Virus record (IMG/VR): IMGVR_UViG_3300007513_000001
Coordinates: 1-64,000 of that record
Strand: one strand, 5' to 3'
DNA: 64,000 nt
Part shown: positions 8,205-59,425 of the stretch, piece by piece
How the letters are laid out: every line of letters starts with the position of its first letter
How positions within the stretch are numbered: the stretch's first letter is position 1
Notes under the pieces: model-generated
The model's database searches: none
The model's input: the letters and a program-made list of their open reading frames with translations, nothing else
Told to the model about the DNA's origin: nothing
Translations under genes and position numbers: made by a program

Positions 8205-8211
8205 TTTTTTT

Positions 8212-14344: not shown

Positions 14345-14584
14345 ATGAAAAGTGTAGCAGAAGTAGTAATGAACTACAAGATGATGGAGCGCTTCGGCGG
14401 CTCTATGCTTCGCGAAGTGAAGTGGCAATATGCTGAAATGGCCGAAGGGCGTGACGGCGGTTCACTTGGCTTTGTTCCGGATGACTGGCCAGGTGACAAC
14501 CAGCCAACTTGCCGAGAATACAACTACCCTGGTTATTCAGATAGCTTCTTTCAGGAAGTACGTGATCTCATGGGATGGAAATAA
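14345..14584 (+). CDS. hypothetical protein
   Basis: GGAG RBS. Confidence 0.6.
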   Translation: MKSVAEVVMNYKMMERFGGSMLREVKWQYAEMAEGRDGGSLGFVPDDWPGDNQPTCREYNYPGYSDSFFQEVRDLMGWK

Positions 14585-14585
14585 T

Positions 14586-43694: not shown

Positions 43695-43950
43695 TCCCAA
43701 CTGGGGAGAACACTGTTCGCGCTGTTAACACAGCCGTCTGGAGCCGAAGGGCTAGGTTCTCCCCAAAACCAATCAACGGAGTCCCACATGGTTTGGACAG
43801 CAATTTGTGCAAATGAACTAGTATTGTCTTTTAACACTTCGGCCAACTGCATTCGTGAAGCTACAGATCACGCTCGCGAAGAAGCCAGGATGGCTGGATC
43901 TTGGCTGATCTGCCTCGTCAAGGGAAAGGTTGAAAATAACGTATATTTCG

Positions 43951-43980
43951 TTTAAACATCGTCTATATCATTACTATAAT
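43951..43980 (+). promoter_or_regulatory. variant promoter TTTAAA-N18-TATAAT
   Basis: Same 18-bp spacing, one mismatch. Confidence 0.5.
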
Positions 43981-44143
43981 AGTATTATCGATTTCGCCGA
44001 GGGATAGGGGAGAAAAACTGCCGCGCCGAACATTATGAGAGACATGAGACGGGGAGCGCTGAGTAGTGATAATCGCTCGCTGGGACCAACACATTAACGA
44101 TTCTCTTCTCTATCCCTCGGCCTTTTCTTTAATGGAAACAAAC

Positions 44144-44338
44144 ATGAACATCGATCCTAATTTTGTCCCGCAAGAACAAACCCTCCGTGAGAGGGAATCC
44201 ATGTACAGGGCAGTTAACTACAAGTATACTAAGCTCGATTACGCCAAGGATGCACTCGCAGCACTGTTTCTTACAAGCGCAGTTATCACTATGGTGTACT
44301 TCGCGTTTGCTCTAGACGCAATTTTTGCCAGTATGTAA
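44144..44338 (+). CDS. small membrane protein
   Basis: C-terminal TM helix. Confidence 0.5.
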   Translation: MNIDPNFVPQEQTLRERESMYRAVNYKYTKLDYAKDALAALFLTSAVITMVYFAFALDAIFASM

Positions 44339-44356
44339 AAAAATAATTGTTGATTC

Positions 44357-44386
44357 TGTAAAATTTCACCCTATTTATGGTATAAT
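44357..44386 (+). promoter_or_regulatory. early-type promoter TGTAAA-N18-TATAAT
   Basis: Motif match. Confidence 0.8.
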
Positions 44387-44412
44387 AGTACTATAAGGTA
44401 AGGAGCAGTTCA

Positions 44413-46643: not shown

Positions 46644-46979
46644 ATGAGAGTAACGGTTAAGCAATTACAGGAATTGGTGGCGGATGCTCGGAGCGAACTT
46701 TCCGAGGCGCAAGCACAATCCCTCAATCCAGTCGGAGACCCTGTCTCCGACGTGCTGCTTGGCGAGTTTCTAGAAGACGTGGCTATCGAGTTAATGCATG
46801 TATACGACGAAGACCCCACCGTGCCAAAGAGGTTAGGAGGCCTAGATTCATATGAAGCCCAAGTGGCCGAGGTACTCGGCTTGGTAGAGGCTTATGTACG
46901 TAATCGCCTATTAGACCTTTGGGCAGGTGAGTATGCGGGTACTGTACCCTTTAATGAGGCTGATTATGTCGGTGAATAG
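46644..46979 (+). CDS. MKITKRQL-leader family protein (divergent leader)
   Basis: MRVTVKQLQELVAD; ends LWAGEY. Confidence 0.6.
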   Translation: MRVTVKQLQELVADARSELSEAQAQSLNPVGDPVSDVLLGEFLEDVAIELMHVYDEDPTVPKRLGGLDSYEAQVAEVLGLVEAYVRNRLLDLWAGEYAGTVPFNEADYVGE

Positions 46980-47273
46980 TGTATCTCGTTATAACTCTTA
47001 TCGAGTTCATCCCGTTAGTCACTCCGATGGTTCACCAACGAGAGACGACCGTTATCCGCGACATACACCGTTAAAAGAATATAAGACTGAACGGCAATTA
47101 ACTAATTCTGAAAATAAAGTGACTCAGCCATCGATGGTCGGTGTATTCTTAGATCGGTGGGCCTAACGCGGTTTTCTTCCGTATTCATTTTAATTTATTG
47201 TGCTCGCGAGTATAGTTATTGGTACTATCGACGATATACATATCTATAGTTTTGTCTAGGGAGGAGAATAGCA

Positions 47274-47585
47274 ATGCCTTTTATAATTCGCACATTACGC
47301 GCGTGGGCTTCTGTTATATCACACCGAGCGGCTTATATGTTCTATCATATAGTAGACCAAAGTACCATGAGAGATTACGGATTGATCGCTGTTAAAGGAA
47401 ATCGGGCCTGGAATCATTATTTAGTGGACCGGGATGATAGTCGCGATCCGCGACCGGAAGACCGGTCGCATTTTTTTAATTTTGGGGGCCTGTTTTTTCC
47501 GAACGAGGCGGGCCGAAACTGCCTCCCGGCAGTTTCTTGGACCGCTCATAAAAACCAATTGGTCCGGATAAAGCAAAAATATTAA
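47274..47585 (+). CDS. hypothetical protein
   Basis: GGAGGAG RBS. Confidence 0.5.
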   Translation: MPFIIRTLRAWASVISHRAAYMFYHIVDQSTMRDYGLIAVKGNRAWNHYLVDRDDSRDPRPEDRSHFFNFGGLFFPNEAGRNCLPAVSWTAHKNQLVRIKQKY

Positions 47586-47603
47586 TCGAAAAACGAGGTT
47601 ATT

Positions 47604-47936
47604 GTGAAAGTTACAAAGAGACAATTAAAAAGAATTATTGAACAAGCCACGGCGCTGCAGGAGCCAATGACTCCTAAATACGTTCATAATTCGCTGATGG
47701 GCAAGAGCGTTCTTAGCGGGGTCGCCTTTATGGATATCGCCATGAATGCAATTAGCGCCGGTGATTTTGTGGCGGCTGCTGATGCAGTTATGGATTCGCT
47801 AATGATAGACGACACCGCGCCAGGAGACGAAGAAGAACTAGCTGATTTACTTTCTACAGCCCAAACCGCAGAAGATGTCGCTATGATAGGTGCAGACTGG
47901 GGCACAAGAAAATTTAGAACGCATTTTGCAGGATAA
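47604..47936 (+). CDS. MKITKRQL-leader family protein
   Basis: MKVTKRQLKRIIEQ. Confidence 0.75.
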   Translation: MKVTKRQLKRIIEQATALQEPMTPKYVHNSLMGKSVLSGVAFMDIAMNAISAGDFVAAADAVMDSLMIDDTAPGDEEELADLLSTAQTAEDVAMIGADWGTRKFRTHFAG

Positions 47937-47939
47937 AAA

Positions 47940-48191
47940 ATGAGAGTTACGAAAAGACAACTTCGAAGCATTATTAAAGAGCAAATCCTCCAAGAGAAGA
48001 TGGGCACCGATGTTTATAAAGTCGTCATGCGAACTCTCAGCAAACAAGGTCCGAAGACTCATCAAGAATTATTGGCTACACTACTTAGCGATTACCCAGG
48101 CGCTTCTGATGAAGAATTAGATAGATATATTGACAGCTTTGAAGAGAGTGGTGATATTATTTACGATAGAAGAAGTCAAAAATATAGATAG
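47940..48191 (+). CDS. MKITKRQL-leader family protein (winged-helix-like body)
   Basis: MRVTKRQLRSIIKEQILQE. Confidence 0.75.
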   Translation: MRVTKRQLRSIIKEQILQEKMGTDVYKVVMRTLSKQGPKTHQELLATLLSDYPGASDEELDRYIDSFEESGDIIYDRRSQKYR

Positions 48192-48200
48192 GTAAACAAT

Positions 48201-48437
48201 ATGAAAATCACGAAACGACAGTTAAAGAGAATTATCAAAGAAGAGAAGGCAAAATCGATTAAAGAGTCGAGATATATGAGCTCTCATGAAGAAAAAGCTC
48301 TCCCCAGCCAAAATGCTGACAGCATCCTCCTTGATCTCGAGTCGCTTCTTGACATGAATTATCACATTTTTACAGACGCTGAAAGTAATATACTTGAACA
48401 GGCACTAGAGATCATGAATAAGCTTCGAGGCCAATAA
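48201..48437 (+). CDS. MKITKRQL-leader family protein
   Basis: MKITKRQLKRIIKEE. Confidence 0.75.
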   Translation: MKITKRQLKRIIKEEKAKSIKESRYMSSHEEKALPSQNADSILLDLESLLDMNYHIFTDAESNILEQALEIMNKLRGQ

Positions 48438-48781
48438 TGAAGATCCCAAGACGACAACTTAGAAGAATCATTCGAGAATCAATTGATGATTGGGGCATGG
48501 GTCCGGATGTTGTCGGAAGATCAGGTCGTTCTTACGGCGCTGACTCTAAAGACGACGGCAGTCATTTCAGGGATGTGATTGTCATGAGCCCTAATGGAGA
48601 TTCAGTTTTGGTTGACGGAAAAGAAACCTACATTCAAGATGTCCCAATGCAATTGGAGCTAATGGGTTTTCCAATGAGCGATATAGATGCAGATAATTTA
48701 ATATTCGCACTAGAAGAATCAATGGCCGATGGCTATGTAGAGCTTGAAGTTAAGTATGAAAATGGAGTATGGAGCTGGTAA
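48437..48781 (+). CDS. MKITKRQL-leader family protein
   Basis: MKIPRRQLRRIIRES. Confidence 0.75.
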   Translation: MKIPRRQLRRIIRESIDDWGMGPDVVGRSGRSYGADSKDDGSHFRDVIVMSPNGDSVLVDGKETYIQDVPMQLELMGFPMSDIDADNLIFALEESMADGYVELEVKYENGVWSW

Positions 48782-49104
48782 TGAAAATCACGAAACGACA
48801 ACTTAGAAAGATTATTAAAGAAGAGAAACTCATGCTTATTACTGAGCAGAGCGTTCCGCAAGGGTTAATAGAGAATCTAAATAATGCCATGATTGCTATT
48901 TTAGACCATTTAGAAAACAATGCGGATCAGCGCGTAGATCCTGAAGATATTCCTCTTCAAGCACTAGAGATAATAGAAGAAGAAGTTGCTGGGTTTAAAG
49001 AGTATTTGGGCTCCGGATATGATGCTGGTGGATGGGATGAAGCCGATCAGGATTATGCCGATCAACAGTATGCCGAACAACATGGCAACCCTTGGGATGA
49101 ATAA
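48781..49104 (+). CDS. MKITKRQL-leader family protein
   Basis: MKITKRQLRKIIKEE. Confidence 0.75.
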   Translation: MKITKRQLRKIIKEEKLMLITEQSVPQGLIENLNNAMIAILDHLENNADQRVDPEDIPLQALEIIEEEVAGFKEYLGSGYDAGGWDEADQDYADQQYAEQHGNPWDE

Positions 49105-49105
49105 A

Positions 49106-49897
49106 ATGAAAATTACAAAGAGACAGCTTAGAAGAATTATTCGAGAAGCCGGCCGGACCGAACACGACGCCGAAGCTCGTGGTATGGCGGCTGCATATCG
49201 CCAAGGTTACAATGATGCCTATCGTGGGCCCGGGTTTAAACGCCGCGGCGGCGGCGCTGAGTATCGTAGAGGATACGAAAAGGGAGTTGCTGATGTAGAA
49301 GAAGGTAAGCCCCCACCCGACGACTTTCGCCCAGCACGGCGCATTCGAGAAGCCGAAGGCTCTACCAAGAAATATGACGATGACTCTGCTCTGAAGGGCG
49401 GCCAAAGTAAGTTACCTGATGGACTTCAAAAGGGTATTATTGATAAGACTGTTGAAGACCGAGAGCAGCGCGAAGAAGAAGAGAGAAAAGAGAAGAACGA
49501 ATCTATCAGAATCACAAGAAGTCAGCTTAGAAGAATTATTAAAGAAGAGAAGCAAAAAATGCTTAATGAGTGGGGATCACGTCCTGAAACGGGCCTTCCA
49601 CTAATTGATTTTGCAAATGCTTATGCTGGCCTGGGAGATGCTGTACAATCACAAGTAGATGCTGTTGTTGCAGCCTACGTTAATGGGGGCGGTCCTGATA
49701 GTGAAAACTTTCGAGAGACTGTATATGAACAAAACCCAAACGCCATTGACATGGCAATGGAAAGGATTGGGCGTTTATACCTTGACGATTCAGATGATTA
49801 CCAACAAATCGTTGAAGCATTGGAATATGCTCAAAGTATTTATGAAGAAGGCGATGCAGAAGTTGAAGCTGATGCTATGGCGGCTGGAGATAGATAG
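49106..49897 (+). CDS. MKITKRQL-leader family protein with internal second leader
   Basis: MKITKRQLRRIIREA; internal IRITRSQLRRIIKEE. Confidence 0.75.
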   Translation: MKITKRQLRRIIREAGRTEHDAEARGMAAAYRQGYNDAYRGPGFKRRGGGAEYRRGYEKGVADVEEGKPPPDDFRPARRIREAEGSTKKYDDDSALKGGQSKLPDGLQKGIIDKTVEDREQREEEERKEKNESIRITRSQLRRIIKEEKQKMLNEWGSRPETGLPLIDFANAYAGLGDAVQSQVDAVVAAYVNGGGPDSENFRETVYEQNPNAIDMAMERIGRLYLDDSDDYQQIVEALEYAQSIYEEGDAEVEADAMAAGDR

Positions 49898-50371
49898 ATG
49901 AAAATCACAAGACGCCAACTCTGCAAAATCATTAAAGAAGCAACAAATTTAACGAGTGGGTTGTTTGCTAAGCCCATGGCGTATGGCGGCATGTATGTGG
50001 AGACATCAGATGGGGAACATATTGGTATAGGAGAAATGTTATTACATCTTGTTGACGCTGGTGACACCGCATTTTTTGATACTGATGATGGGCTCGACCC
50101 GGAAAATCTCGAGAAGATCCTGTCTCGAGACAACGAAGGAGTTCAGGGAGGCGCACGAAAGTGGGACTCGGATGTATTCGAGCAGTATTATGGCGTAAAT
50201 CTCGTCAAGCTCGTTAATCGTTATGCTTACAATAAAAAGCTCCGGCCCGTGCATTGGCTCGGCGAAGATGGTGAGATGCCATCAGACGTTGCTTGGCGGG
50301 AACAAAACAACCCTCCAGAGCCTGAGTACGAAGATGATGGCACAAACAAATTTGAGGAACAGTATTCATGA
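49898..50371 (+). CDS. MKITKRQL-leader family protein
   Basis: MKITRRQLCKIIKEA. Confidence 0.75.
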   Translation: MKITRRQLCKIIKEATNLTSGLFAKPMAYGGMYVETSDGEHIGIGEMLLHLVDAGDTAFFDTDDGLDPENLEKILSRDNEGVQGGARKWDSDVFEQYYGVNLVKLVNRYAYNKKLRPVHWLGEDGEMPSDVAWREQNNPPEPEYEDDGTNKFEEQYS

Positions 50372-50655
50372 AAATCACCAAACGTCAGCTTAGAAACATT
50401 ATTACCGAGCTTGGTATCGATCGCATGACGAGTGGTGATAATGATCCGCGTCTTGATGACCCCGATGATATGACCCTTAGCATTGAGCTTTGGGAAAAGA
50501 TTGTTGAGCACCTTCAAGCAATAAATGATATTTTTGATAGTGACGCGGGACGACAACTCATCGTTACCGGTGGAGACGATGCGTTACAAAAAGGCGCAAT
50601 CCAAGATGCATTACCCTGGGCCCAAGACTGGCTTCAGTACATGAAGGAAGAATAA
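50368..50655 (+). CDS. MKITKRQL-leader family protein
   Basis: MKITKRQLRNIITEL. Confidence 0.75.
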   Translation: MKITKRQLRNIITELGIDRMTSGDNDPRLDDPDDMTLSIELWEKIVEHLQAINDIFDSDAGRQLIVTGGDDALQKGAIQDALPWAQDWLQYMKEE

Positions 50656-50656
50656 A

Positions 50657-50977
50657 ATGAAAATCACAAAAAGACAACTTAGAAAAATCATTAAAGAATC
50701 TGTGACAGATACAATTCCCTACGAAGCCGCGGCAGAACAGTCGGCAGCTAAAGTAGCCGATCTTTTCTATAAAGATATGATGGCACTATTCGAAGAGACT
50801 CCCGAAGCTTTCGAGGGTCGTACGAATAGACTGGAGTGGGAAGAACAAGTCGTTTATGCTATACAAGAAATTGAGACCGGCATAACCGCAGCAATCGAAG
50901 AAGTTATACAAAGAATCGAAACTCAACTTCACGACGGTGAATATGATACCGGCGGTGAAACTGGAGCATACGGGTGA
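50657..50977 (+). CDS. MKITKRQL-leader family protein
   Basis: MKITKRQLRKIIKES; ends LHDGEY. Confidence 0.75.
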   Translation: MKITKRQLRKIIKESVTDTIPYEAAAEQSAAKVADLFYKDMMALFEETPEAFEGRTNRLEWEEQVVYAIQEIETGITAAIEEVIQRIETQLHDGEYDTGGETGAYG

Positions 50978-50980
50978 ATT

Positions 50981-51760
50981 ATGAAAATTAATAAAAACAA
51001 ATTAAAGCAAATAATCAAAGAAGTTCGAATGGTACATGCTCGTCCTTCGCCAATGAAATCTAGAGCTAACTCAGAAACTATAGAAGCTATAAAAAATCAG
51101 CGCTTAGTAGAATATGAACAGTATGTCGATGAAGATGGCAATGTCTACGATGACGAGGGCAATGTAAGTCGTCGAGGCCGGAGCTTTGGAAGACAATATG
51201 GTGGTCAAACATACACTGGAACTCGACCTCCATGGAGCGGAAGAAGCAAATATAAGTCTACAAGAAAAACTTCGTATGTTGGCGCTGATTCTAACGCAGA
51301 TCAAATTGCAGCTGTAGAAGCTGCTATAGCTGTTAAGCCAAACAATTTTCTAACTTCTATATTAAAACAACTCAAAAAAGGCCGAGGTTTGAGTGCAAAG
51401 CAAAAATCAATTGTAAAGAAAATTATTGTTAAAAATGACGCAGAAGCAGCAAAGCTTTTCGAAGGTCGTAGAATGAAAATCACCAAACGCCAACTTAGAA
51501 GAATTATTAAAGAAGAGAGGCAGACACTCCTTAAAGAATATTCTGACTATCCTTCGTGGCTAGATTTATCAGACCAAGTAGACGATATTTCGGAGATGTT
51601 AGACATGGCTGCTGACAAGTATGTTACAAGTGCCTGGTTGTTTAGTGGTGAGAACGAAGGAAATGCTATTGCTGATGGTGTAGCCGAAAAATTAGAGCAG
51701 CTTTATAGAGATGCTGAAGCTTTAGGCGGATTGATTCGTGGAAGCGGAGCAATTAAATAA
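50981..51760 (+). CDS. MKITKRQL-leader family fusion of two cassettes
   Basis: MKINKNKLKQIIKEV; in-frame MKITKRQLRRIIKEE at 51473. Confidence 0.75.
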   Translation: MKINKNKLKQIIKEVRMVHARPSPMKSRANSETIEAIKNQRLVEYEQYVDEDGNVYDDEGNVSRRGRSFGRQYGGQTYTGTRPPWSGRSKYKSTRKTSYVGADSNADQIAAVEAAIAVKPNNFLTSILKQLKKGRGLSAKQKSIVKKIIVKNDAEAAKLFEGRRMKITKRQLRRIIKEERQTLLKEYSDYPSWLDLSDQVDDISEMLDMAADKYVTSAWLFSGENEGNAIADGVAEKLEQLYRDAEALGGLIRGSGAIK

Positions 51761-52281
51761 TGAAAATCACAAAAAGACAACTTAAACAGATTATCAAGGA
51801 AGGTATTGATATCTTGAACTCCGAGACCGGCGAGCTTCTGGTATTTGAAGATGACTGGCAGGATGGCAGTGCTGACGCACCAGAGGCTGCTGCTAGAGAC
51901 ATAATGAAGCGCTTGAATATAACCGAGCTTCCATCGAACTGGGGCCGGGAGGATGGGGTTGAGACAATCGAGGTTACTCCCGATGACTGGGCGCTGATAG
52001 ATGTGGAGCTGCGCGGCAAACGACGCTATCGCAAAAATAAGAGAGAGCAGGAACGTTTGGATATTGATAATCTTCTTGCAAGAGCAGACCAGTGGGCAAT
52101 GGATGCTAGTGGTGATTATGGAGCCGACAACCCAGAAGTAGATATGCAAGATATAGCTTGGGATCTTGCTGCAGGCGCCAAGTATGAATTTAGAGAAGAT
52201 GAGTGGGATGAACTTATTTGGCACTTTGATAACAGCGAAGACGAGCTTCTAACTTTTATTGCGGACAGGATTGCAGGATAA
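51760..52281 (+). CDS. MKITKRQL-leader family protein
   Basis: MKITKRQLKQIIKEG. Confidence 0.75.
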   Translation: MKITKRQLKQIIKEGIDILNSETGELLVFEDDWQDGSADAPEAAARDIMKRLNITELPSNWGREDGVETIEVTPDDWALIDVELRGKRRYRKNKREQERLDIDNLLARADQWAMDASGDYGADNPEVDMQDIAWDLAAGAKYEFREDEWDELIWHFDNSEDELLTFIADRIAG

Positions 52282-52385
52282 CAATGAAATATTTAGATTT
52301 AATATTAGAAGACTTGGAATATGCTCTTGTAGTAGAACTCGAAGACTTATATGATATTTGGTCATGGCATCCAGGGATGGGATAA

Positions 52386-52715
52386 ATGAGAATCACAAAG
52401 AGACAGCTTAGAAGAATCGTTCATGAAGCCATGGTGACCAAAGGGACACCATATTCCAGAAATCCGAGTTTTAAACTCCCTTATCGAGGAACTGGATATG
52501 GCGGGCGAAGAATAATCTCTCGAGATAGAGCGTGGCTTGAATTTGTCCCTCGGGGGTCAGATCCCCTAACGCCAGAAGACATGTTTAGATCAGTGACACT
52601 TTTAGAAATCGATGATCCAGAAATTTTAAAAGCTCTCCAGTCAGGCGCACCAAAATCGATGGGGCCACTAGACAGCTATGATGTTTATAGCGTATACGCA
52701 ACTACTGCGGGGTAA
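52386..52715 (+). CDS. MKITKRQL-leader family protein
   Basis: MRITKRQLRRIVHEA. Confidence 0.75.
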   Translation: MRITKRQLRRIVHEAMVTKGTPYSRNPSFKLPYRGTGYGGRRIISRDRAWLEFVPRGSDPLTPEDMFRSVTLLEIDDPEILKALQSGAPKSMGPLDSYDVYSVYATTAG

Positions 52716-52717
52716 AA

Positions 52718-53074
52718 ATGAGAATCACAAGACGACAGCTTAAAAGAATTATCAAGGAATATGGAAGCGGCTATTCAAGTAATAGTCCACCCTCAAAACA
52801 ATCTAACTGGCGCGGGTTTGCAGATGCGTTGGATATCGGTGTACTCGATCTAGATGAAATTGCTTACGACTTAGGGTTTCAAGATTTCAGAGATATGGAT
52901 GCCAGTATAACCCCTGATCGTTTATCTAAGCGTGACCCGGGCTCATTCCTTGCCGCTGTTCGTAATTTTGCATTGTCCGTCGATGGACTAGATGACCGCG
53001 AGATTCTGCAGGTTGCAGGAACGCCATCCGATCTTTTAGATCGTGACTCACTTGTTAGAAGAACCACTTATTAG
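52718..53074 (+). CDS. MKITKRQL-leader family protein
   Basis: MRITRRQLKRIIKEY. Confidence 0.75.
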   Translation: MRITRRQLKRIIKEYGSGYSSNSPPSKQSNWRGFADALDIGVLDLDEIAYDLGFQDFRDMDASITPDRLSKRDPGSFLAAVRNFALSVDGLDDREILQVAGTPSDLLDRDSLVRRTTY

Positions 53075-53083
53075 GATATTCTC

Positions 53084-53602
53084 GTGAAAATAACTAAAAA
53101 ACAAATAAAAAGAATCATAAGAGAATTTTATTCAGTTGATGTTGAAAATTATCTTCGCGCTAACGCAGCAGAATATCATAAAGATCCTTCACTAGATTTT
53201 GCATCTATAAAAATGCTTTTAATGGACGATTTCATGGACAATGTTGGATACAGCGAAGATCCTTCTCAATATGAACAACTTATTAATCAACTTGCAGCTG
53301 GAGAAGATATTAGAGAATCTCTTTTAAAAGAAACACCTGTCGGCGCTTTTGAGAATTGGGAAGCTATAAGAGATTCCATCGCACACCAGCTCTGGGAACT
53401 TGGTACAATATCTGGAATGGAGTTAGTTTCTGCAGTTCAAGGAGGGTATAATTGGGCTTCACCCCCAGCACAAAATGACATATTTTCTGTATTAGACCAA
53501 ATGCTAGAAGAAGATGAAGTTGATTTTGATGTAGAAGAAGACGAATGGAGCCTAAGTGATCGTGGCAATTACTATGATTACATGAAAGGATTTAAGTCAT
53601 GA
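53084..53602 (+). CDS. MKITKRQL-leader family protein
   Basis: MKITKKQIKRIIREF; internal IRESLLKE. Confidence 0.75.
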   Translation: MKITKKQIKRIIREFYSVDVENYLRANAAEYHKDPSLDFASIKMLLMDDFMDNVGYSEDPSQYEQLINQLAAGEDIRESLLKETPVGAFENWEAIRDSIAHQLWELGTISGMELVSAVQGGYNWASPPAQNDIFSVLDQMLEEDEVDFDVEEDEWSLSDRGNYYDYMKGFKS

Positions 53603-54252
53603 AAATTACAAAATGCCAGCTTAGAAATATTATTAGAGAATCTCTTCTTACCGAAGGCGAAATGCAAGATATTATCGTCAACTCGTACGAAGATGTAGAG
53701 ATATACAACATTCTTGCAAATTATGCTCTCGTCAATGATATTCAAGGCGCGCTTGCCGACCCTGAAATAAAACCTTATGTTGAAAAGAATGAAGTGGGGT
53801 GGATATCTGATGAAGCCGGTGGGTGGTTCGAAAACGTTGGAGAGTACGATGAGATGCCGGCACCAGAAGGTTGGGACAGCCAAAAGGCGTACAAGTTCTT
53901 AAGAGATCTGGAGGATGCAGCTTGGAAAGTATACAACAAGCAGGCGAAGGCAGCCATTGCTGGTGATCCAGACAAGGAGTTCTTGGAATTCTTAGGTAAC
54001 GAGTGGACTAGCATGATCGAACCCAATGACTTGTCAGACATCAAGTGGAAAGAGTACAAAAAGTACATTCGACTTAAGCCGCCCCGTTCTATATCTCATG
54101 GTGTTGGAGAGATCAATGTTTCAAAAGAAAATATTAATGCTCTATATCCAGGTGCTTACGATGACTTTATAGACTTTTTAACTACACGTACAGGTGGACA
54201 GCTCGGAAGGCGCAAGCCATACAAGAGATCACCGGCGCCATACTACGATTGA
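53599..54252 (+). CDS. MKITKRQL-leader family protein
   Basis: MKITKCQLRNIIRESLLTE. Confidence 0.75.
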   Translation: MKITKCQLRNIIRESLLTEGEMQDIIVNSYEDVEIYNILANYALVNDIQGALADPEIKPYVEKNEVGWISDEAGGWFENVGEYDEMPAPEGWDSQKAYKFLRDLEDAAWKVYNKQAKAAIAGDPDKEFLEFLGNEWTSMIEPNDLSDIKWKEYKKYIRLKPPRSISHGVGEINVSKENINALYPGAYDDFIDFLTTRTGGQLGRRKPYKRSPAPYYD

Positions 54253-54259
54253 GATACAG

Positions 54260-54709
54260 ATGAAAATTACTAAAAGACAGCTTCGAGGAATCGTCAGAAA
54301 AACCTTATTAGAAAATGCTACAGCTGATGAGCTTCGAAAAATTGAACTGCTTTGGTGGAGTGATGAAGCTGGAGGGTATTCTAACAGAGATCAAGCCAGG
54401 ATGATTATCAACACCCTGGGTGTCAACCCTAGACTTTTAAAGATTTGGACTATAATACTTCCTTGGGGAGAGATTTATGAGCCATGGACATTTTACGGTG
54501 GACCAGAAGAGGGTGAAGCTGGATTTAGAGTAGATGATGTCAACAGAATTCTTGACTACTTTAATTCTGAAAACGAGATTCAATTAACTGCTACATTTCA
54601 CAACAAGACAGGTCATGTAGAGTTAGATACTCCATCCCATTTAGACCAGGGCACCAGCTATGATATTTCTGATGGGATAGAAAAAGCCGCTTTTGAGACT
54701 GCAGAATAA
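54260..54709 (+). CDS. MKITKRQL-leader family protein
   Basis: MKITKRQLRGIVRKTLLE. Confidence 0.75.
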   Translation: MKITKRQLRGIVRKTLLENATADELRKIELLWWSDEAGGYSNRDQARMIINTLGVNPRLLKIWTIILPWGEIYEPWTFYGGPEEGEAGFRVDDVNRILDYFNSENEIQLTATFHNKTGHVELDTPSHLDQGTSYDISDGIEKAAFETAE

Positions 54710-54950
54710 AGCCGTCAGAAGCTACTCGATATATTCTTTATTTTAATTGATGAGACTTACATTTATAATAGCGGAGAACAACGAAAGACATTCTGTTAAA
54801 CTATAAGGATATTCTGTGGATAGTTCCGCTAAAAAAGTATATTTATAAAAACGATATCTAGAATATCGCATTGTTCTAAATCGGTGTTCAATTTAAACTA
54901 AAAAAATAATAACGATAAAGAGACTTGATATATAGTCTCAGAGGTGTTAA

Positions 54951-55409
54951 ATGAAACTTTCTAAAAGACAATTAAGAAAATTAATTAAAGAAGCTTGCGG
55001 CGATGTTGTCGACGCAGCTACAGAGCCAGTTGCTTTAGATTTAGCCCTAGAGCCAACTCCAGCCGTAGTAGAATCTACAGCTCCAGAACAAGACTTAATG
55101 GTCGAGATGGAAGTCGCGCAAAGAGCGCTAGAGCAAGTTGTAGAATCTGTTCAAAATGCTGCTCACTTGTGCCATGATTGTGTTCCTGAAGTCGCAGCTC
55201 AAGCGCCGCTAATGGAAGCAATGGTTGCACAAGCTGTAGCGCTTCAAGAAACTCTTGAGGCACAGACACTAGTTGTTGCAGAGTCTGCTGAAGATACCCC
55301 TCTTTTGGACGCTGTTGGAGATGCTGCTGAAATTGTGGCAGATGCAATGGAAGAGACTCCAAGGAGAGCTGGCGTTACGCTTGGGTTCAACGGTCCAGGG
55401 TTTATGTAA
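54951..55409 (+). CDS. MKITKRQL-leader family protein
   Basis: MKLSKRQLRKLIKEA; very acidic, CHDC. Confidence 0.75.
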   Translation: MKLSKRQLRKLIKEACGDVVDAATEPVALDLALEPTPAVVESTAPEQDLMVEMEVAQRALEQVVESVQNAAHLCHDCVPEVAAQAPLMEAMVAQAVALQETLEAQTLVVAESAEDTPLLDAVGDAAEIVADAMEETPRRAGVTLGFNGPGFM

Positions 55410-55413
55410 AACA

Positions 55414-55629
55414 ATGAAAATTTCAAAGAGACAGCTTAAAAGAATTATTAGAGAAGAGAAAGCTCGCTTAAGCGAACTTGGTATTGACCGTCAGTCTGGT
55501 CAAGAACTGTATGCTGATCTAACCGACGCGCAACAGTTGGCATTAATTAATTTGCGGCGTGCAGTAGACGAATGTGTTGCCGTCGGAGTTTCTGAGGCTG
55601 ATATGATAGACACATTTAAATCGAGGTAG
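55414..55629 (+). CDS. MKITKRQL-leader family protein
   Basis: MKISKRQLKRIIREE. Confidence 0.75.
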   Translation: MKISKRQLKRIIREEKARLSELGIDRQSGQELYADLTDAQQLALINLRRAVDECVAVGVSEADMIDTFKSR

Positions 55630-55633
55630 TGTT

Positions 55634-56239
55634 GTGAAAATCACAAAAAGACAATTAAGAAGAATTATTAGAGAAGAATCACACGAGTTTGGCGGTGGAG
55701 CTCACGAATATAAGCGGGATGATGGTCACCGCACGGGAGATGTAGCTGGCCACTATAAAGATTATGAGGGCGACTGGGGCGGTGATGCAGGCGATGATTC
55801 AAAAACAGACCCTGGCCATAAAGATTATGACGATGTACACCACAAAGCAAAAGCCGCAGTTGCAGCGATTCAAGACCTGGCCGCATCGGCTGGAGTAAGC
55901 ATGGATATGGATGTTGACGGTAAAGATTTAGATCCCGCAGCTTCTGATGGCGACCTAGCGCTGGCTTTAGAACGACGCATTCGCACTCGTAGACTCGCAC
56001 GAAAGATGATTAGAGAAGAAAAGAGAAAGCTTAGAAGAAGACTCTATGAAGACAGCATAGATGATGAATTAGATAATCTTCATAAAAACATTGGAAATGA
56101 TATCGATCACATCAAAGATCTTAAAGATGATATCAAAGATGAAAAAGAAGAAGAGCACAGGGCTGAATTAGAAAAAGAACGCAAAGATGAATCGTTAAGA
56201 CGTTTTATTAGAAAAGAAGTAAAACGCATTAGAGGATAA
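55634..56239 (+). CDS. MKITKRQL-leader family protein with internal leader-like motifs
   Basis: MKITKRQLRRIIREE; LARKMIREE; LRRFIRKE. Confidence 0.75.
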   Translation: MKITKRQLRRIIREESHEFGGGAHEYKRDDGHRTGDVAGHYKDYEGDWGGDAGDDSKTDPGHKDYDDVHHKAKAAVAAIQDLAASAGVSMDMDVDGKDLDPAASDGDLALALERRIRTRRLARKMIREEKRKLRRRLYEDSIDDELDNLHKNIGNDIDHIKDLKDDIKDEKEEEHRAELEKERKDESLRRFIRKEVKRIRG

Positions 56240-56240
56240 T

Positions 56241-56582
56241 ATGTTCACCCAAAAAGACTTAGTTCGCATTATTCGTGAAGAGCTTGAAGCTGATCGTAAG
56301 ACTATTCCATCTGGTGAAATAGATGAAGAGGGCCCAGGATCGATTGAAGATGTCGAAGCGAGAGAAAATGTTTGGTCTGGCGGGGATAATCTTTCTATTG
56401 ATGTAGATCAGTCTGAAGCTTCCGGATCTGAGCCGACCACTAAAGAACCAGAAACTATGAAAATTTCTGAGGGTTTAAATAAAGTAGTAAAACAGCTAGA
56501 AATAGCCCAGAGAAAAGGAATCCCACCACAGCCAACGACTCTATTAGAGCTTTATAGACTGCAGGATAAGTTGAAAAAATGA
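56241..56582 (+). CDS. MKITKRQL-leader family protein (divergent leader)
   Basis: MFTQKDLVRIIREE. Confidence 0.7.
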   Translation: MFTQKDLVRIIREELEADRKTIPSGEIDEEGPGSIEDVEARENVWSGGDNLSIDVDQSEASGSEPTTKEPETMKISEGLNKVVKQLEIAQRKGIPPQPTTLLELYRLQDKLKK

Positions 56583-56953
56583 AAATCACAAGAAAACAAC
56601 TGAGAAGAATTATTCGAGAAAGTAAAATCTTGAAAGAGCAGCCCATATCGGGAGAACAAGCTGCTGAAATGCAGGCAGCGCAAGAGAGACATTGGCCAAG
56701 GGTGGAATGGAACGATGCTGCTGATTTAGCAGATAAATGGGCTGACATGGAAGAAAAGTCTTTTGATAAAGGTGACCCTTCGATGACAAAAAACGGAGAG
56801 TTGACAGCCGCTGAAGCTAAAGAGTGGTGGAATTCTCAAGTAGAAAACGCCATGATAGACATGGAGGCTGCGTTAACAGATAGAGTTCGTAAAATAGCTT
56901 TAGAAACTATGCAAGAATATAGCTTGATGTTAGATAATGGAGATTTTGCGTAA
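56579..56953 (+). CDS. MKITKRQL-leader family protein
   Basis: MKITRKQLRRIIRES; ends LDNGDF. Confidence 0.75.
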   Translation: MKITRKQLRRIIRESKILKEQPISGEQAAEMQAAQERHWPRVEWNDAADLADKWADMEEKSFDKGDPSMTKNGELTAAEAKEWWNSQVENAMIDMEAALTDRVRKIALETMQEYSLMLDNGDFA

Positions 56954-56990
56954 AGTTTAAAATTCATATTCTTGTATTATAATTGCAATT

Positions 56991-57491
56991 ATGAAGATTT
57001 TTACTGAAAAATTATCCCGTAAAAGCTACTATATGGGTCCAATTGAAATCAAAACCAGCACTATTGAAGGTGCTGGTTTTGGTGTTTTTGCTAAAGAAAA
57101 AATAAAAAAACGCCAACTTATTGAAAGGTGTCCGGTAATACTATTTGATAGATGGATTTTTCAGCTTTATGAACAAAGTAGAGAACACGGCCATATTTTA
57201 AGTGAATATATTTTTAGATGGCCCGGTGGAAGAAATGTAGCTTTGGCAATGGGGTATGGCGGAATGTTTAATCATTCCGAAGAGGCCAACGCTAAATGGA
57301 CATACACTGTAACAGAAGGAAAATTAGTTAAGGACGGCATATCAGAACTCGGGCCGTTTAACTGCTTGAATTTTTATACAAGAAAAGATATTGAAGCTGG
57401 CGAAGAATTATTCATAGATTATGGCATAAAAAGTGAGTTCGGCTTAAACGATAATATTAATCATGATTCTATAAGAAGAACTATATTTTAG
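56991..57491 (+). CDS. SET-domain protein (lysine methyltransferase-like)
   Basis: GAGFGVFA; MFNHS; GEELFIDYG. Confidence 0.85.
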   Translation: MKIFTEKLSRKSYYMGPIEIKTSTIEGAGFGVFAKEKIKKRQLIERCPVILFDRWIFQLYEQSREHGHILSEYIFRWPGGRNVALAMGYGGMFNHSEEANAKWTYTVTEGKLVKDGISELGPFNCLNFYTRKDIEAGEELFIDYGIKSEFGLNDNINHDSIRRTIF

Positions 57492-57536
57492 CATGTTGAG
57501 CCGCTGTATACTTAGTTACGGTACAGCGGTGAAAAT

Positions 57537-57761
57537 ATGTCTCTCAACAAAGCCCTTCAAGTGGGCGATTTAGTGTATGTGAAAAGTCAAGAAAATAGTG
57601 CTATAGCACCACTTTTACCTAATAAAGAAGGTGGATTTGGAATTGTAGTTAATATTAAACCGACTAGAATTTTTCCGTCTGAAAAGAAATCAGAGCTATA
57701 TGGAATTTTTATTAAAGGAAAAATTCAAGACTTACTAAGCGAAAGTATAAATAAAGTTTAA
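57537..57761 (+). CDS. SH3/KOW-like miniprotein (MKVGDLV family)
   Basis: LQVGDLVYV...GIVV. Confidence 0.6.
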   Translation: MSLNKALQVGDLVYVKSQENSAIAPLLPNKEGGFGIVVNIKPTRIFPSEKKSELYGIFIKGKIQDLLSESINKV

Positions 57762-57803
57762 CATAGATATTTAATAAAGAAGAACCACACGGAGTTTTAT
57801 TCT

Positions 57804-58076
57804 ATGCTTATCAAAAAGAAAAAATTAAAGAAAATAATTCGAGAATCAATGCAGTTTATAAAAGAATCTCATGAAGCTCCGTGCCCTATAGCCACCGCAA
57901 ACCAATTACATGCGGCTGGGTATAGCCAAGAAGAAGTAAATCAGTTTGTTAATTCTCTATTAAATCAATATCAATCTAATAAACAAAAAGATTTTGAACC
58001 AACCAGAAGTAAAGGTTATGTTTCTAGTCCCAACAGGGGCGGAATTATTGGCGGACTCGGGTTTGGGGGATTTTAA
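57804..58076 (+). CDS. MKITKRQL-leader family protein (divergent leader)
   Basis: MLIKKKKLKKIIRES...IKES. Confidence 0.7.
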   Translation: MLIKKKKLKKIIRESMQFIKESHEAPCPIATANQLHAAGYSQEEVNQFVNSLLNQYQSNKQKDFEPTRSKGYVSSPNRGGIIGGLGFGGF

Positions 58077-58077
58077 A

Positions 58078-58320
58078 ATGGCGGTGTTTTGGAGATCTAA
58101 ACTTATACCAGCGCAATATAGAAGTTGGATAGACCAGCAATTTACAAAAACCCTCAGCACTAAACCTGGAGTTGGTAATGGCACCGATGCAAAAGCAGCT
58201 ATTGAAGACATGGTAAAAGATTTTAAGAAAACTCATGCTATAGAAAACAACAAAGAAGTCGAAGAAGTCGAAGAAGTCGAAGAAGTCGAAGAAGTCGAAG
58301 AAGTCGAAGATAAAGAATAA
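58078..58320 (+). CDS. hypothetical protein with EVE tandem repeat
   Basis: ATG after upstream stop. Confidence 0.55.
   Translation: MAVFWRSKLIPAQYRSWIDQQFTKTLSTKPGVGNGTDAKAAIEDMVKDFKKTHAIENNKEVEEVEEVEEVEEVEEVEDKE
58255..58308 (+). repeat. 9-bp tandem repeat GAAGTCGAA x6
   Basis: Directly visible; encodes (EVE)6. Confidence 0.9.
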
Positions 58321-58641
58321 ATGTCTAACTCTTTATTATTGGTGAGAGATTATATTTCTTTTATTTTAAAAGAAGTTATCGGGCCCGAGCAGGAAGTCGG
58401 GTTTGGAAAAAACTACCACACTTTAGATCCAAAACCTATCACTTGGGAAAATTATCCTGGGCTAAATTTCGATATATCTGCAGATCCGGATGGCACTTAT
58501 TGGGCTTCTGTAAGCGTTGAAAAAAGACCAGAGCTATCGACACCCACTAGAAACTTTGCTGATGAGACCACAGCTATGGCTTGGATAAGAGGTCAATATG
58601 ACCAATTGCATCGAGTTTTAATGAACTCTGAAGCCAAATAG
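58321..58641 (+). CDS. protein with MNLLREYI-type leader
   Basis: LLVRDYISFILKEV. Confidence 0.6.
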   Translation: MSNSLLLVRDYISFILKEVIGPEQEVGFGKNYHTLDPKPITWENYPGLNFDISADPDGTYWASVSVEKRPELSTPTRNFADETTAMAWIRGQYDQLHRVLMNSEAK

Positions 58642-59370
58642 AACTTCCCAGCCGTATAAGAATTCAGCAACCTCTTCATGCGTAGTTGCTATCCCGATAT
58701 TGTCGTTTCCATAGACGGCTGAATGAATCAACCCTATTATTTCAAAGTTTTCATTAAGAATAGCTGCGCCCGATGACCCACTTTGAGTTGGAATTGTGTA
58801 TATATCATCTCTATCTAAAACATCGTTAATCTTTCCAGAATATACACCTTCAAAAATAGGAACCATCCCAGGAGAAAAGAATCCACCGGGTGCAGCTAAA
58901 GAATAAGCTCGGTCTCCAATTTCTGGAGGAGTTGACGAGATCTCTACTGGAGAAGTCCAAGAACCCTCAACTTTTAAAATACACAAATCTTTAGCTGGGT
59001 CGTTATAAATCATGTCAGCAGCCCTAGTTTCTCCAAAGTAGTCTATTATTGAATTTACTAATAGAGTTTCATCTCCATAAAGCTGTATTACGCTGTCGTA
59101 AAAAGGTGGTATACAAACATGATTAGCGGTTAACACATAAGTATAAGAGTTGTCGACATGAAACACTATTCCTGAACCCACAGCTCCAATAGTGTTGGAG
59201 TTGTTTTCTGCAAATAATAAAACTTCTGTTTCTACTTGCGCAAAAGCATCTACTGGCAGATAAGCAGCATCTAGTTTTTTTAAACTTCTAAGTTGTTTTC
59301 CGTGCATCCATATAATGCCGGTCATCATAAAAATCGTAGTCAGCCATAAGATGCGTGTAAGAGACTTCAT
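58618..59370 (-). CDS. trypsin-like serine protease
   Basis: LTANHV, DLCILKV, GSSG catalytic triad; N-terminal TM. Confidence 0.85.
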   Translation of the reverse strand: MKSLTRILWLTTIFMMTGIIWMHGKQLRSLKKLDAAYLPVDAFAQVETEVLLFAENNSNTIGAVGSGIVFHVDNSYTYVLTANHVCIPPFYDSVIQLYGDETLLVNSIIDYFGETRAADMIYNDPAKDLCILKVEGSWTSPVEISSTPPEIGDRAYSLAAPGGFFSPGMVPIFEGVYSGKINDVLDRDDIYTIPTQSGSSGAAILNENFEIIGLIHSAVYGNDNIGIATTHEEVAEFLYGWEVLFGFRVH

Positions 59371-59425
59371 AAAATTAAATATCAACTTAGATGCTTAAGG
59401 AGCAAAATTTTGTTTTTAGCGCATA

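What the first reader, a model, noticed from the sequence alone, without database searches (positions are those of the whole stretch)
46644..58076. About 23 unrelated proteins share an N-terminal MKITKRQLRRIIKE leader: candidate capsid-targeting and cleavage signal for an injected cargo array
Seen: nearly every + strand gene from 47604 to 56953, plus 46644 and 57804, starts with a basic ~14-aa motif M(K/R)ITKRQL(R/K)xII(K/R)E. The bodies that follow are mostly non-homologous and strongly acidic. Many have a second (L/I)xE a few residues later (LITE, LLKE, LLTE, ILKE, ILQE). Known: T4 internal head proteins carry a short N-terminal capsid-targeting sequence (IPIII MKTYQEFIAE) that the gp21 prohead protease removes after (I/L)-x-E. 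Inference: this is an analogous but much larger plug-and-play system, in which any gene that acquires the leader is packaged, processed and ejected with the DNA.
Basis: partly seen in the sequence, partly recalled or inferred. Interest (0 to 1): 0.92.

Follow-up and report, generated by a model that had tools for sequence, protein, structure and literature searches.

The report
Shared head-targeting leader on phage proteins
An uncultured 293-kb marine phage related to T4 puts the same 14-residue N-terminal tag on about 29 otherwise unrelated small proteins, and comparative evidence suggests the tag loads them into the phage head and is then cut off, as in T4 but on a far larger scale; no experiment has tested this yet.

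Summary
A leader model scores 22 sites in window 47,604-56,953 at 21-34.5 bits, all on the + strand. Background in all six frames is at most about 5 bits. Twenty sites are ORF N-termini and two are internal. Sites 56241 and 57804 are degenerate, and 46644 has lost the leader.

Conservation is at the peptide level. It stops sharply after residue 15, and 93% of family members have [I/L]-x-E at residues 12-14.

The family is large: 566 unique proteins in 264 body clusters from about 45 large marine viral contigs. Profile comparisons find no relationship between body clusters.

Three results link the tag to the head:
- The window's own contig encodes a T4-type head module with a gp21-family (Peptidase_S77-type) prohead protease. 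That family cuts after L/I-x-E.
- The only head-module proteins that match the leader model are two conserved small proteins next to that protease.
- In related phages the leader arrays sit inside the late sheath-tube-baseplate operon.

AlphaFold models the leader as a detached helix followed by a flexible linker.

Best reading (about 0.6): a T4-like capsid-targeting propeptide, greatly expanded. Unlike T4 internal proteins, the cargo is acidic. Packaging, cleavage and ejection are all untested.

The parts
47604..47936 (+). leader gene (GTG start), 110 aa, acidic body
   Evidence: leader HMM 24.8 bits; translation
47940..48191 (+). leader gene, 83 aa
   Evidence: 28.0 bits
48201..48437 (+). 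leader gene, 78 aa
   Evidence: 30.9 bits
48437..48781 (+). leader gene, 114 aa
   Evidence: 29.2 bits; orthologues in L012, L022, L062, L078
48781..49104 (+). leader gene, 107 aa
   Evidence: 29.7 bits
49106..49897 (+). two-unit leader protein, 263 aa: N-terminal leader plus an internal leader at 49505 whose first codon is ATC, so it is not a start
   Evidence: 34.5 and 21.3 bits; codons
49898..50371 (+). leader gene, 157 aa
   Evidence: 31.4 bits; 9-member body cluster
50368..50655 (+). leader gene, 95 aa
   Evidence: 31.7 bits
50657..50977 (+). leader gene, 106 aa
   Evidence: 32.7 bits; homologues in 12 loci
50981..51760 (+). two-unit leader protein, 259 aa, with a basic first unit; internal leader at 51473 keeps an ATG
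   Evidence: 22.1 and 29.4 bits
51760..52281 (+). leader gene, 173 aa; leader modelled as detached, C-terminal helical domain confident
   Evidence: 29.1 bits; AlphaFold residues 1-13 pLDDT below 50, residues 100-173 above 90; 110 representative clusters in 1.84 billion proteins
52386..52715 (+). leader gene, 109 aa, basic body
   Evidence: 33.5 bits; pI
52718..53074 (+). leader gene, 118 aa
   Evidence: 31.8 bits
53084..53602 (+). leader gene (GTG start), 172 aa
   Evidence: 23.6 bits
53599..54252 (+). leader gene, 217 aa; helix 5-15, flexible linker 14-20, then a confident globular domain
   Evidence: 31.9 bits; AlphaFold mean pLDDT 83.7; no PDB fold match
54260..54709 (+). leader gene, 149 aa (Lys at position 14 instead of Glu; L-L-E follows at 17-19)
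   Evidence: 26.3 bits; sequence
54951..55409 (+). leader gene, 152 aa
   Evidence: 28.0 bits
55414..55629 (+). leader gene, 71 aa
   Evidence: 28.2 bits
55634..56239 (+). leader gene (GTG start), 201 aa, highly charged low-complexity body
   Evidence: 28.2 bits
56241..56582 (+). gene with a degenerate leader that keeps L-x-R-I-I-R-E-E, 113 aa
   Evidence: 5.1 bits; sequence
56579..56953 (+). leader gene, 124 aa
   Evidence: 27.3 bits; homologues in 5 loci
57804..58076 (+). gene with a degenerate leader (keeps K-K-I-I-R-E), 90 aa
   Evidence: 11.8 bits
46644..46979 (+). family member by body homology whose leader has decayed
   Evidence: 0.9 bits; body 36% identical over 96 aa to leader gene L013:10691
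47450..47469 (+). terminator-like hairpin (8 pairs, 7 G-C, then a T run) about 135 nt upstream of the first leader gene; suggests the array is its own transcription unit
56991..57491 (+). SET-domain gene without a leader, lying between leader genes (context only, not a member)
   Evidence: PF00856, E = 1.4e-15

Best explanation
The 14-residue leader, M-(K/R)-I-T-(K/R)-(R/K)-Q-L-(R/K)-x-I-I-(K/R)-E, is most likely a capsid-targeting propeptide. The proposed mechanism has four steps.

1. The leader forms a short basic amphipathic helix on a flexible tether. During head assembly it docks the protein onto the prohead core of this distant T4 relative.
2. The gp21-family prohead protease cuts after Glu14 (an I-x-E site). 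In about half the family there is a back-up site after a second L-x-E near residue 22. Cutting frees the body inside the head.
3. Internal leaders in multi-unit proteins would act as further cut sites, releasing several bodies from one polypeptide.
4. The freed, mostly acidic bodies are then either ejected with the DNA as early anti-defence or takeover factors (the more likely fate, given their diversity) or expelled as core debris.

What is shown:
- the motif, its sharp boundary and its peptide-level conservation;
- that the bodies are not detectably related;
- the T4-type head genes and protease on the same contig;
- the specific resemblance to two proteins in the head module;
- the late-operon location of arrays in relatives.

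What is inferred: docking, cleavage, packaging and ejection.
For: 1. The motif is far above chance and sharply bounded. The window has 22 sites at 21-34.5 bits against a background of at most about 5. In the first 25 loci (250 unique leaders), positions 1-14 carry 3-4 bits each and information collapses after position 15.
2. Selection acts on the peptide, not the DNA. Synonymous codons vary, 30 nt upstream are 29% identical, and third codon positions are 62% identical.
3. Unrelated bodies share the leader. There are 566 unique proteins in 264 clusters, and 0 of 703 cluster pairs reach 90% HHalign probability. One homologous body lacks the leader and another has a 40-residue spacer.
4. The protease is present. 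The window's own contig (L332) has a protease 77% identical to L199's, which hits Peptidase_S77 at E = 1.3e-23. Alongside are a T4-type portal and a Gp23-type capsid protein.
5. The cut motif matches. gp21 cuts after L/I-X-E (PMC9026906). The KVP20 record places the mature capsid N-terminus after L-N-E, and T4 gp23 shows L-T-E65 followed by Ala. In the family, 93% of leaders have [IL]-x-E at 12-14, and 55% have a second site against 18% of controls.
6. Only head-core proteins resemble the leader. Among 1,785 ORFs in the 83 head-module loci, only the core143 family (32 of 75 at 8 bits or more, maximum 22.2) and weakly core110 match. None of 1,307 other ORFs does; their maximum is 4.8.
7. In related phages, 5-11 leader genes lie between the tail tube and baseplate hub, in the same late operon as the capsid gene.
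8. AlphaFold gives the leader pLDDT below 50 (g51760), or a helix followed by a linker below 50 (g53599), ahead of confident domains.
9. There is precedent: T-even internal proteins share only a targeting sequence (PMC3012670; PMC9026906).
Against: - There is no direct evidence of packaging, cleavage or ejection, and no cultured member carries an array.
- In the window the array lies about 115 kb from the head module, next to replication and metabolic genes. It follows a terminator, and no T4-type late promoter is evident: TATAAATA occurs twice against 3.6 expected.
- The cargo is acidic, whereas T4 internal proteins are basic with pI 8.9-9.5. Acidic proteins are an odd partner for packed DNA.
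- The leader is not homologous to the T4 targeting sequence.
- The resemblance to core143 is a short motif. The family median is 5.9 bits, and the window phage's own copy scores 9.9.
- The roles of core143 and core110 are themselves inferred from gene position. They show no homology to T4 gp67, gp68 or gp22.
- No cargo body has a recognisable function.
Confidence: 0.6

Rival explanations
1. The leader does target proteins to the prohead, but these proteins are extra scaffold or core components of a very large head rather than delivered cargo. After assembly the protease degrades them and they are expelled or left as small acidic peptides, as happens to T4 gp22, gp67 and gp68.
For: The bodies are acidic and largely helical, like T4 gp22 and gp67 as read from the T4 record. 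The leader resembles proteins that lie between the protease and the scaffold-like gene. Some bodies are highly charged and low in complexity, for example 55634-56239.
Against: A scaffold role does not explain 264 unrelated body families with patchy presence and absence among relatives. Two bodies are modelled as compact globular domains at pLDDT around 90. A separate 562-aa scaffold-like protein is already conserved in the head module.
Confidence: 0.15
2. The leader has nothing to do with the capsid. It is a basic amphipathic docking helix that brings many different small acidic proteins to one common cytoplasmic partner, such as nucleic acid, RNA polymerase, a chaperone or a membrane. The array would then be a set of early host-takeover or anti-defence proteins.
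For: In the window, the array lies among non-structural genes: a MoxR-type ATPase and VWA protein upstream, a helicase downstream, and a tRNA nucleotidyltransferase beside the second cluster. Arrays of small acidic co-oriented genes are typical of early phage regions (general knowledge). The consensus leader has a raised helical hydrophobic moment, 1.72 against a shuffle mean of 0.94, though 6% of shuffles reach it.
Against: This does not explain three things. Glu14 is 96% conserved with [IL] at position 12, and a second [IL]-x-E is enriched. The resemblance is confined to two head-module proteins out of 1,785 ORFs. In relatives the arrays sit inside the late sheath-tube-hub operon. Sigma-70-like promoters are not enriched in the array: 18 found against 26.9 expected.
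Confidence: 0.13
3. The leader targets proteins to the tail, for example the tube lumen, tape-measure complex or baseplate, rather than to the head.
For: In L043, L114-116, L121 and L140 the arrays lie exactly between the tail tube gene and the baseplate hub and tape-measure genes. More distant sheath relatives have 1-5 genes with a degenerate leader just downstream of the sheath gene.
Against: The leader-like conserved proteins (core143, core110) lie in the head module beside the prohead protease, not in the tail module. The [IL]-x-E ending matches the head protease. A tail lumen has little room for tens of different 10-20 kDa proteins (inference).
Confidence: 0.05
4. There is one hyper-diverged multigene family in which only the N-terminus has stayed recognisable, or the conservation reflects an mRNA or translation-initiation element. 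In either case the leader is not a portable signal.
For: Five window units fall in one 73-member single-linkage cluster. Identical residues share the same codon more often than expected, 0.59 against 0.39, and codons are A-rich.
Against: None of 703 body-cluster pairs reaches 90% HHalign probability. Two modelled bodies have different architectures. Internal leaders that cannot be starts (ATC at 49505; I or V in P0006 and P0010) keep the full motif. Upstream DNA is not conserved and third positions are 62% identical.
Confidence: 0.04

Closest known systems
[quoted passage not shown]
   Same: - A short N-terminal propeptide is shared by otherwise unrelated small proteins.
- It ends in [I/L]-x-E, the gp21 cut motif.
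- The phage encodes a gp21-family protease, a T4-type portal and a Gp23-type capsid protein.
- The cargo genes vary between relatives.

   Different: - The leader has 14 residues and is strongly basic (+3 to +6). The first 10 residues of T4 IPII and IPIII, the length of the T4 sequence, carry net charge -1. The leader HMM does not hit the T4 proteins.
- This one phage has about 29 tagged genes (22 strong sites here plus 7 at 284.5-286.2 kb), and the clade has 264 body clusters. T4 has three internal proteins.
- The bodies are acidic rather than basic.
- Multi-unit proteins with internal leaders occur.
- Genes form long co-oriented arrays, in some phages inside the tail operon.
- Nothing has been tested experimentally.
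Inner-body and ejection proteins of giant phages phiKZ, 201phi2-1 and SPN3US, processed by a diverged gp21-like protease
   Same: These are giant phages that package many different proteins with the DNA. Propeptides are removed after Glu by a gp21-related protease, and propeptides carry redundant cut sites (PMC9026906).
   Different: The cut motif there is S/A-X-E, not I/L-X-E. The literature read here describes no single shared leader for those proteins. The head module here is of the T4 type (Gp23, Portal_T4), with the nearest cultured capsid proteins only 33-47% identical.
Phage P1 Dar system (DarA and Hdf-dependent packaging of anti-restriction proteins into the head)
   Same: Defence-countering proteins are incorporated into a myovirus head during morphogenesis and delivered with the DNA. 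Only the abstracts of PMC12810830 and PMC9024508, as listed, were read.
   Different: No common short leader was identified for that system in what was read here. The gene count is smaller and the head-assembly lineage differs. No sequence comparison was made.
Encapsulin cargo-loading peptides
   Same: A short portable peptide addresses unrelated cargo to the interior of an HK97-fold shell (general knowledge, not tested here).
   Different: Those peptides are usually C-terminal and are not removed by a protease. They belong to cellular nanocompartments, not virions. This is an analogy only.

Membership tests
T4-type capsid-targeting propeptide system | A short N-terminal sequence shared by proteins whose mature parts are unrelated | tested here: met
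   The window has 22 sites at 21-34.5 bits. The family has 566 proteins in 264 body clusters, and 0 of 703 cluster pairs reach 90% HHalign probability.
T4-type capsid-targeting propeptide system | The propeptide ends in the gp21 cut motif L/I-x-E | tested here: met
   [IL]-x-E occurs at residues 12-14 in 93% of 537 proteins. Glu14 is 96% conserved among the first 250 unique leaders. A second site is present in 55% against 18% of controls. The motif definition comes from PMC9026906 and the KVP20 mature-peptide annotation.
T4-type capsid-targeting propeptide system | The same genome encodes a gp21-family (Peptidase_S77) prohead protease and T4-type head genes | tested here: met
   L332 is the window's own contig, positions 164,483-179,082. 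Its protease at 6992-7603 is 77% identical to the L199 protease, which hits PF03420 at E = 1.3e-23. L199 also hits Portal_T4 and Gp23.
T4-type capsid-targeting propeptide system | Sequence homology of the leader to the T4 IPI, IPII or IPIII targeting sequence | tested here: not met
   The leader HMM scores T4 IPI at -3.6 bits and gives no hit for IPII or IPIII. In T4 the Glu of [IL]-x-E falls at position 10, 10 and 19. The first 10 residues carry net charge -1 or +1, against +3 to +6 here.
T4-type capsid-targeting propeptide system | Mature cargo is small and basic, as for T4 internal proteins | tested here: not met
   88% of bodies are net acidic and window body pI is mostly 4.05-5.5. T4 IPs have pI 8.9-9.5. 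PMC9026906 calls them 'basic proteins'.
T4-type capsid-targeting propeptide system | The proteins are in the virion with the propeptide removed and enter the host with the DNA | not testable with these tools
   No cultured member carries an array, and no proteomic data are available. Needs virion mass spectrometry or N-terminomics.
T4-type capsid-targeting propeptide system | The leader alone is enough to package a foreign protein | not testable with these tools
   Needs leader-reporter fusions. The only indirect support is that leader and body are separable modules.
phiKZ-like inner-body propeptides | Cleavage at S/A-X-E by a phiKZ gp175-like protease | tested here: not met
   The residue two before the Glu is Ile in 95% of leaders. 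The head module is T4-type rather than phiKZ-type. The motif is from PMC9026906.
Any curated protein family for the leader proteins (Pfam, PHROGs) | A significant match to an existing model | tested here: not met
   None of ten window proteins matched at E below 0.01 in Pfam or PHROGs. Of the 30 longest cargo proteins, only two gave weak Pfam hits. The string KITKRQL appears in no paper of the library.

The most novel reading that the evidence does not exclude
This clade of uncultured marine jumbo phages may use one portable 14-residue address tag, borrowed from its own prohead-core proteins, to load dozens of different and rapidly exchanged acidic proteins into each virion. Some would be loaded as multi-unit polyproteins that the head protease cuts apart. 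The phage would then inject them with its DNA as a pre-made anti-defence and takeover arsenal. That would be by far the largest virion-delivered effector repertoire known in a phage, and a natural 'tag it and it gets packaged' system.
Probability: 0.35. Interest if true: 0.85.

Novelty: new variant of a known kind. Interest (0 to 1): 0.7.

Why it matters
If the leader works as proposed, a single motif search would list the injected-protein repertoire of a widespread group of marine jumbo phages. Here that gave 566 proteins and 264 body families from about 1 Mb of sequence. Almost all of these have no known function and no known fold, which makes them a rich pool of candidate anti-defence and host-takeover proteins.

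It would also show that the capsid-targeting principle worked out in T4 is a general and evolvable mechanism. T4 researchers have already suggested that it could be a way for phages to incorporate various proteins.

Two features would be new: acidic cargo and polyprotein cargo.

Finally, it would offer a second natural tag-and-protease pair for loading foreign proteins into phage heads.

Tried and rejected
- Megablast of 20 kb of the window and tblastn of one cargo protein against 50,697 phage records found nothing.
- The word-indexed protein search on residues 1-40 gave only 11 candidates. A 14-residue motif cannot reach significance against 5.8 billion sequences.
- A full-text search for the string KITKRQL found no paper.
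- Pfam and PHROGs gave nothing for the leader proteins.
- Foldseek against the PDB gave no match for two confident models; the best E-values were 1.1 and 0.72.
- The 'one diverged family' idea was tested and rejected by profile-profile comparison.
- The 'DNA repeat or promoter element' idea was rejected by codon and upstream-sequence analysis.
- T4 late-promoter TATAAATA is not enriched, and inspection of upstream regions showed no motif shared by the head module and the array. Expression timing stays open.
- Rfam found only the four tRNAs.
- HHalign of the head-module small proteins against T4 gp67, gp68 and gp22 found no homology, so their 'prohead core' role rests on position only.
- The neighbouring trypsin-like peptidase and the MoxR/VWA-metallopeptidase pair were considered as processing enzymes. 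Both are syntenic with arrays in some loci, but nothing else links them to the leader, and the gp21-family protease fits the motif.
- The cultured Flavobacterium phage immuto was scanned over about 142 kb. It has one gene with a leader-like start, gp080, and no array.

Full report
**Observation**

ORF listing shows the motif directly. A strict regular expression finds 22 matches. All are on the + strand between 47,610 and 57,810, and none occurs elsewhere in the six frames. A 16-column HMM built from the leaders scores 22 window sites at 21.3-34.5 bits, against a window background of at most about 5 bits.

Twenty sites begin an ORF at ATG or GTG, preceded by a Shine-Dalgarno-like purine run. 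Two are internal. Site 49505 has ATC as its first codon, so it cannot be a start. Site 51473 keeps an ATG.

Site 57804 scores 11.8 bits and 56241 scores 5.1. Site 46644 scores 0.9 and is not a leader. Its body, however, is 36% identical to a true leader gene elsewhere on the same contig, so it is a family member whose leader has decayed.

**Peptide-level conservation, not DNA**

Within the 22 leaders, synonymous codons vary. Ile uses ATC, ATT and ATA. Thr uses all four codons. Arg uses AGA, CGA, CGC and CGT. Leu uses CTT, TTA, CTC and CTG.

Mean pairwise identity is 68% for amino acids and 62% for third codon positions. The 30 nt upstream are 29% identical. Identical residues share a codon somewhat more often than body codon usage predicts (0.59 against 0.39). 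That points to a preference for A-rich codons or some shared ancestry, not to a DNA repeat.

**Source and family**

The window is positions 1-64,000 of IMG/VR contig 3300007513_000001, which is 293,409 bp long. A second cluster of seven leader genes lies at about 284.5-286.2 kb, next to a tRNA nucleotidyltransferase gene.

A degenerate DNA pattern for the consensus leader hits 83 stretches on about 45 viral contigs, many of them 100-290 kb long. Among 185,579 species-representative genomes it hits only five stretches, all on four MAG contigs. One of those contigs is 306 kb long, so these are probably mis-binned phage.

In 1.05 Mb of fetched loci there are 841 hits of at least 12 bits, making 566 unique proteins. 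No locus has leaders on both strands.

Among the first 250 unique leaders, positions 1-14 carry about 3-4 bits each: Q7 92%, L8 96%, I12 95%, E14 96%. Information collapses after position 15, apart from a weaker (K/R)-L-L-x-E at positions 18-22. Median length is 108 aa.

**Are the bodies unrelated?**

Within the window, BLASTP links only one pair. Family-wide, 551 bodies form 264 clusters, 186 of them singletons. Five window units belong to one 73-member cluster, so some are distant paralogues.

Profile-profile comparison of 38 clusters gave 0 of 703 pairs at 90% probability or more, and only one pair above 50%. Many window bodies have orthologues at 35-65% identity in other contigs, so they are real, conserved genes.

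In the family, 88% of bodies are net acidic, against 60% of neighbouring ORFs. Nothing matches Pfam, PHROGs or PDB folds.

**Structure**

AlphaFold with orthologue alignments gives two consistent pictures.
- For g51760, residues 1-13 have pLDDT below 50, while the C-terminal helical domain is above 90.
- For g53599, there is a helix at residues 5-15 (about 64), a linker at 14-20 below 50, and then a domain at about 90.

The leader is therefore modelled as a tethered tag, not as part of the fold.

**Link to the head**

A sheath gene next to leader genes in small contigs led to L140. Its order is: Gp23-type capsid gene, adaptor, two sheath paralogues, tube, 11 leader genes, baseplate hub, tape measure. 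Sheath relatives at about 50% identity carry one to five genes with a degenerate leader (MKLTxxQLRxIIKE-like) just downstream of the sheath gene.

Using the capsid protein and then the protease as queries recovered head modules, including L332 from the window's own contig. Its order is: large terminase, T4-type portal, 283-aa protein, gp21-family protease, 151 aa, 143 aa ('core143'), 110 aa ('core110'), 174 aa, 194 aa, a 562-aa acidic scaffold-like protein, and a Gp23-type capsid protein. The near-identical module in L199 gives Pfam hits to Peptidase_S77 (1.3e-23), Portal_T4 (1e-75) and Gp23 (1.6e-76).

Core143 begins MAK(I/L)(T/S)(K/R)xxLKG(I/L)VKE-CLVE-ILxEGL. Core110 contains (K/R)KLTPSLL(R/K)(R/K)(L/M)V(L/M)(Q/E)E.

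Among 1,785 ORFs in the 83 head-module loci, only two families reach 8 bits on the cargo-leader HMM:
- core143, with 32 of 75 members and a maximum of 22.2 bits;
- core110, with 3 of 73 members.

None of 1,307 other ORFs does; their maximum is 4.8. Six array-bearing contigs were each shown to carry this protease.

**Protease specificity**

PMC9026906 states that gp21 cuts after L/I-X-E. It also reports that the IPIII targeting sequence is 10 residues long, with targeting set by residues 4 and 7 and processing by residues 8 and 10. It adds that propeptides in related giant phages carry redundant cut sites.

The KVP20 GenBank record places the mature capsid N-terminus at residue 63, after G-L-N-E. 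T4 gp23 shows F-L-T-E65 followed by Ala. The capsid protein of this phage has a conserved V-L-R-E-A at residues 58-62; that this is the cut site is inference.

In the leader family, 93% have [IL]-x-E at residues 12-14. The next residue is Glu, Ala or Ser in most. A second [IL]-x-E lies within residues 15-30 in 55%, against 18% of control windows.

**Modularity**

A profile of the g51760 family finds 110 representative clusters among 1.84 billion proteins. Retrieved members include the following:
- proteins with two or three leader units, such as P0012;
- internal leaders starting with Ile or Val (P0006, P0010);
- a leader separated from the body by a 40-residue acidic spacer (P0043);
- a 554-aa protein that carries the body domain with no leader (P0108).

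**Comparison with T4**

T4 IPI, IPII and IPIII, read from NC_000866, have pI 8.9-9.5. The Glu of their [IL]-x-E falls at position 10, 10 and 19, and the leader HMM does not hit them. So the architecture and the enzyme family match T4, but the leader sequence, its charge, the cargo charge and the scale do not.

The nearest cultured capsid proteins are only 33-47% identical. Flavobacterium phage immuto has the same protease family and one gene, gp080, that starts MKKSQLRQIIKEA (17.1 bits).

**Weaknesses**

- All evidence is comparative.
- In the window the array lies far from the head genes, follows a terminator-like hairpin at 47450-47469, and shows neither enriched sigma-70-like promoters nor T4-type late promoters. 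Expression timing is unknown.
- The head-core role of core143 and core110 rests on gene position. They have no homology to T4 gp67, gp68 or gp22.
- Acidic cargo fits scaffold-like debris as well as it fits injected DNA-mimic-type effectors.

**Verdict**

It is a new, much expanded variant of the known T4 capsid-targeting system, found in an uncultured distant-T4 lineage of marine jumbo phages.

Noticed in passing
window 46980-47603: A stretch of about 620 nt with no convincing ORF lies just upstream of the array. It contains G+C-rich hairpins and a strong terminator-like hairpin at 47450-47469 (+). Rfam finds nothing there.
   Followed up: partly
window 56991-57491 (+): A SET-domain protein (PF00856, E = 1.4e-15), a putative lysine methyltransferase, lies without a leader between leader genes. 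No orthologue was found in the first 25 related loci.
   Followed up: partly
window 58618-59385 (-): A trypsin-like peptidase (Trypsin_2) with an N-terminal hydrophobic segment. It is syntenic just downstream of leader arrays in six related loci. Nothing else links it to the leader.
   Followed up: partly
window 42615-45831 (+): A MoxR-type AAA+ ATPase is followed by a DUF2201 protein with a putative metallopeptidase domain and a VWA-like domain. The pair is syntenic upstream of arrays in L003 and L008. The segment is G+C-rich (0.47-0.51 against about 0.42) and carries a long mirror ORF on the opposite strand.
   Followed up: partly
window about 58,255-58,300, inside ORF 57994-58320: A perfect hexanucleotide repeat (GAAGTC)n encodes a run of Glu-Glu-Val at the C-terminus of a 108-aa ORF.
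   Followed up: no
window 4313-9859: An auxiliary-gene cluster: a PLP-dependent enzyme (PALP, 4313-5182), an IMPDH/GMP-reductase-like gene (6273-7325) and four tRNA genes (Leu, Lys, Thr, Pro; 7607-9859).
   Followed up: no
L332:11787-13685 and 13779-14600 (window's own contig, about 176-179 kb): Two tandem Gp23-type capsid genes have an identical first 90 residues. This could be a gp23/gp24-like duplication or an assembly repeat. The second copy runs off the end of the locus.
   Followed up: no
L043:5671-11949 (-), L140:6754-13033 (+): Two adjacent tail-sheath paralogues of more than 1,000 aa each, 35-39% identical. This sheath type occurs in more than 500 IMG/VR contigs.
   Followed up: partly
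L006:4949-6202; L022:13297-14949; proteins P0012, P0006, P0010: Single ORFs carry two or three full leader units. Some internal units start with Ile or Val rather than Met. These look like natural polyproteins of cargo units.
   Followed up: partly
L353:6287-7045 (Flavobacterium phage immuto NC_055915, gp080): A cultured, distantly related phage with the same protease family has one 252-aa hypothetical protein that starts MKKSQLRQIIKEA (17.1 bits on the leader HMM). It is a possible experimental entry point.
   Followed up: partly
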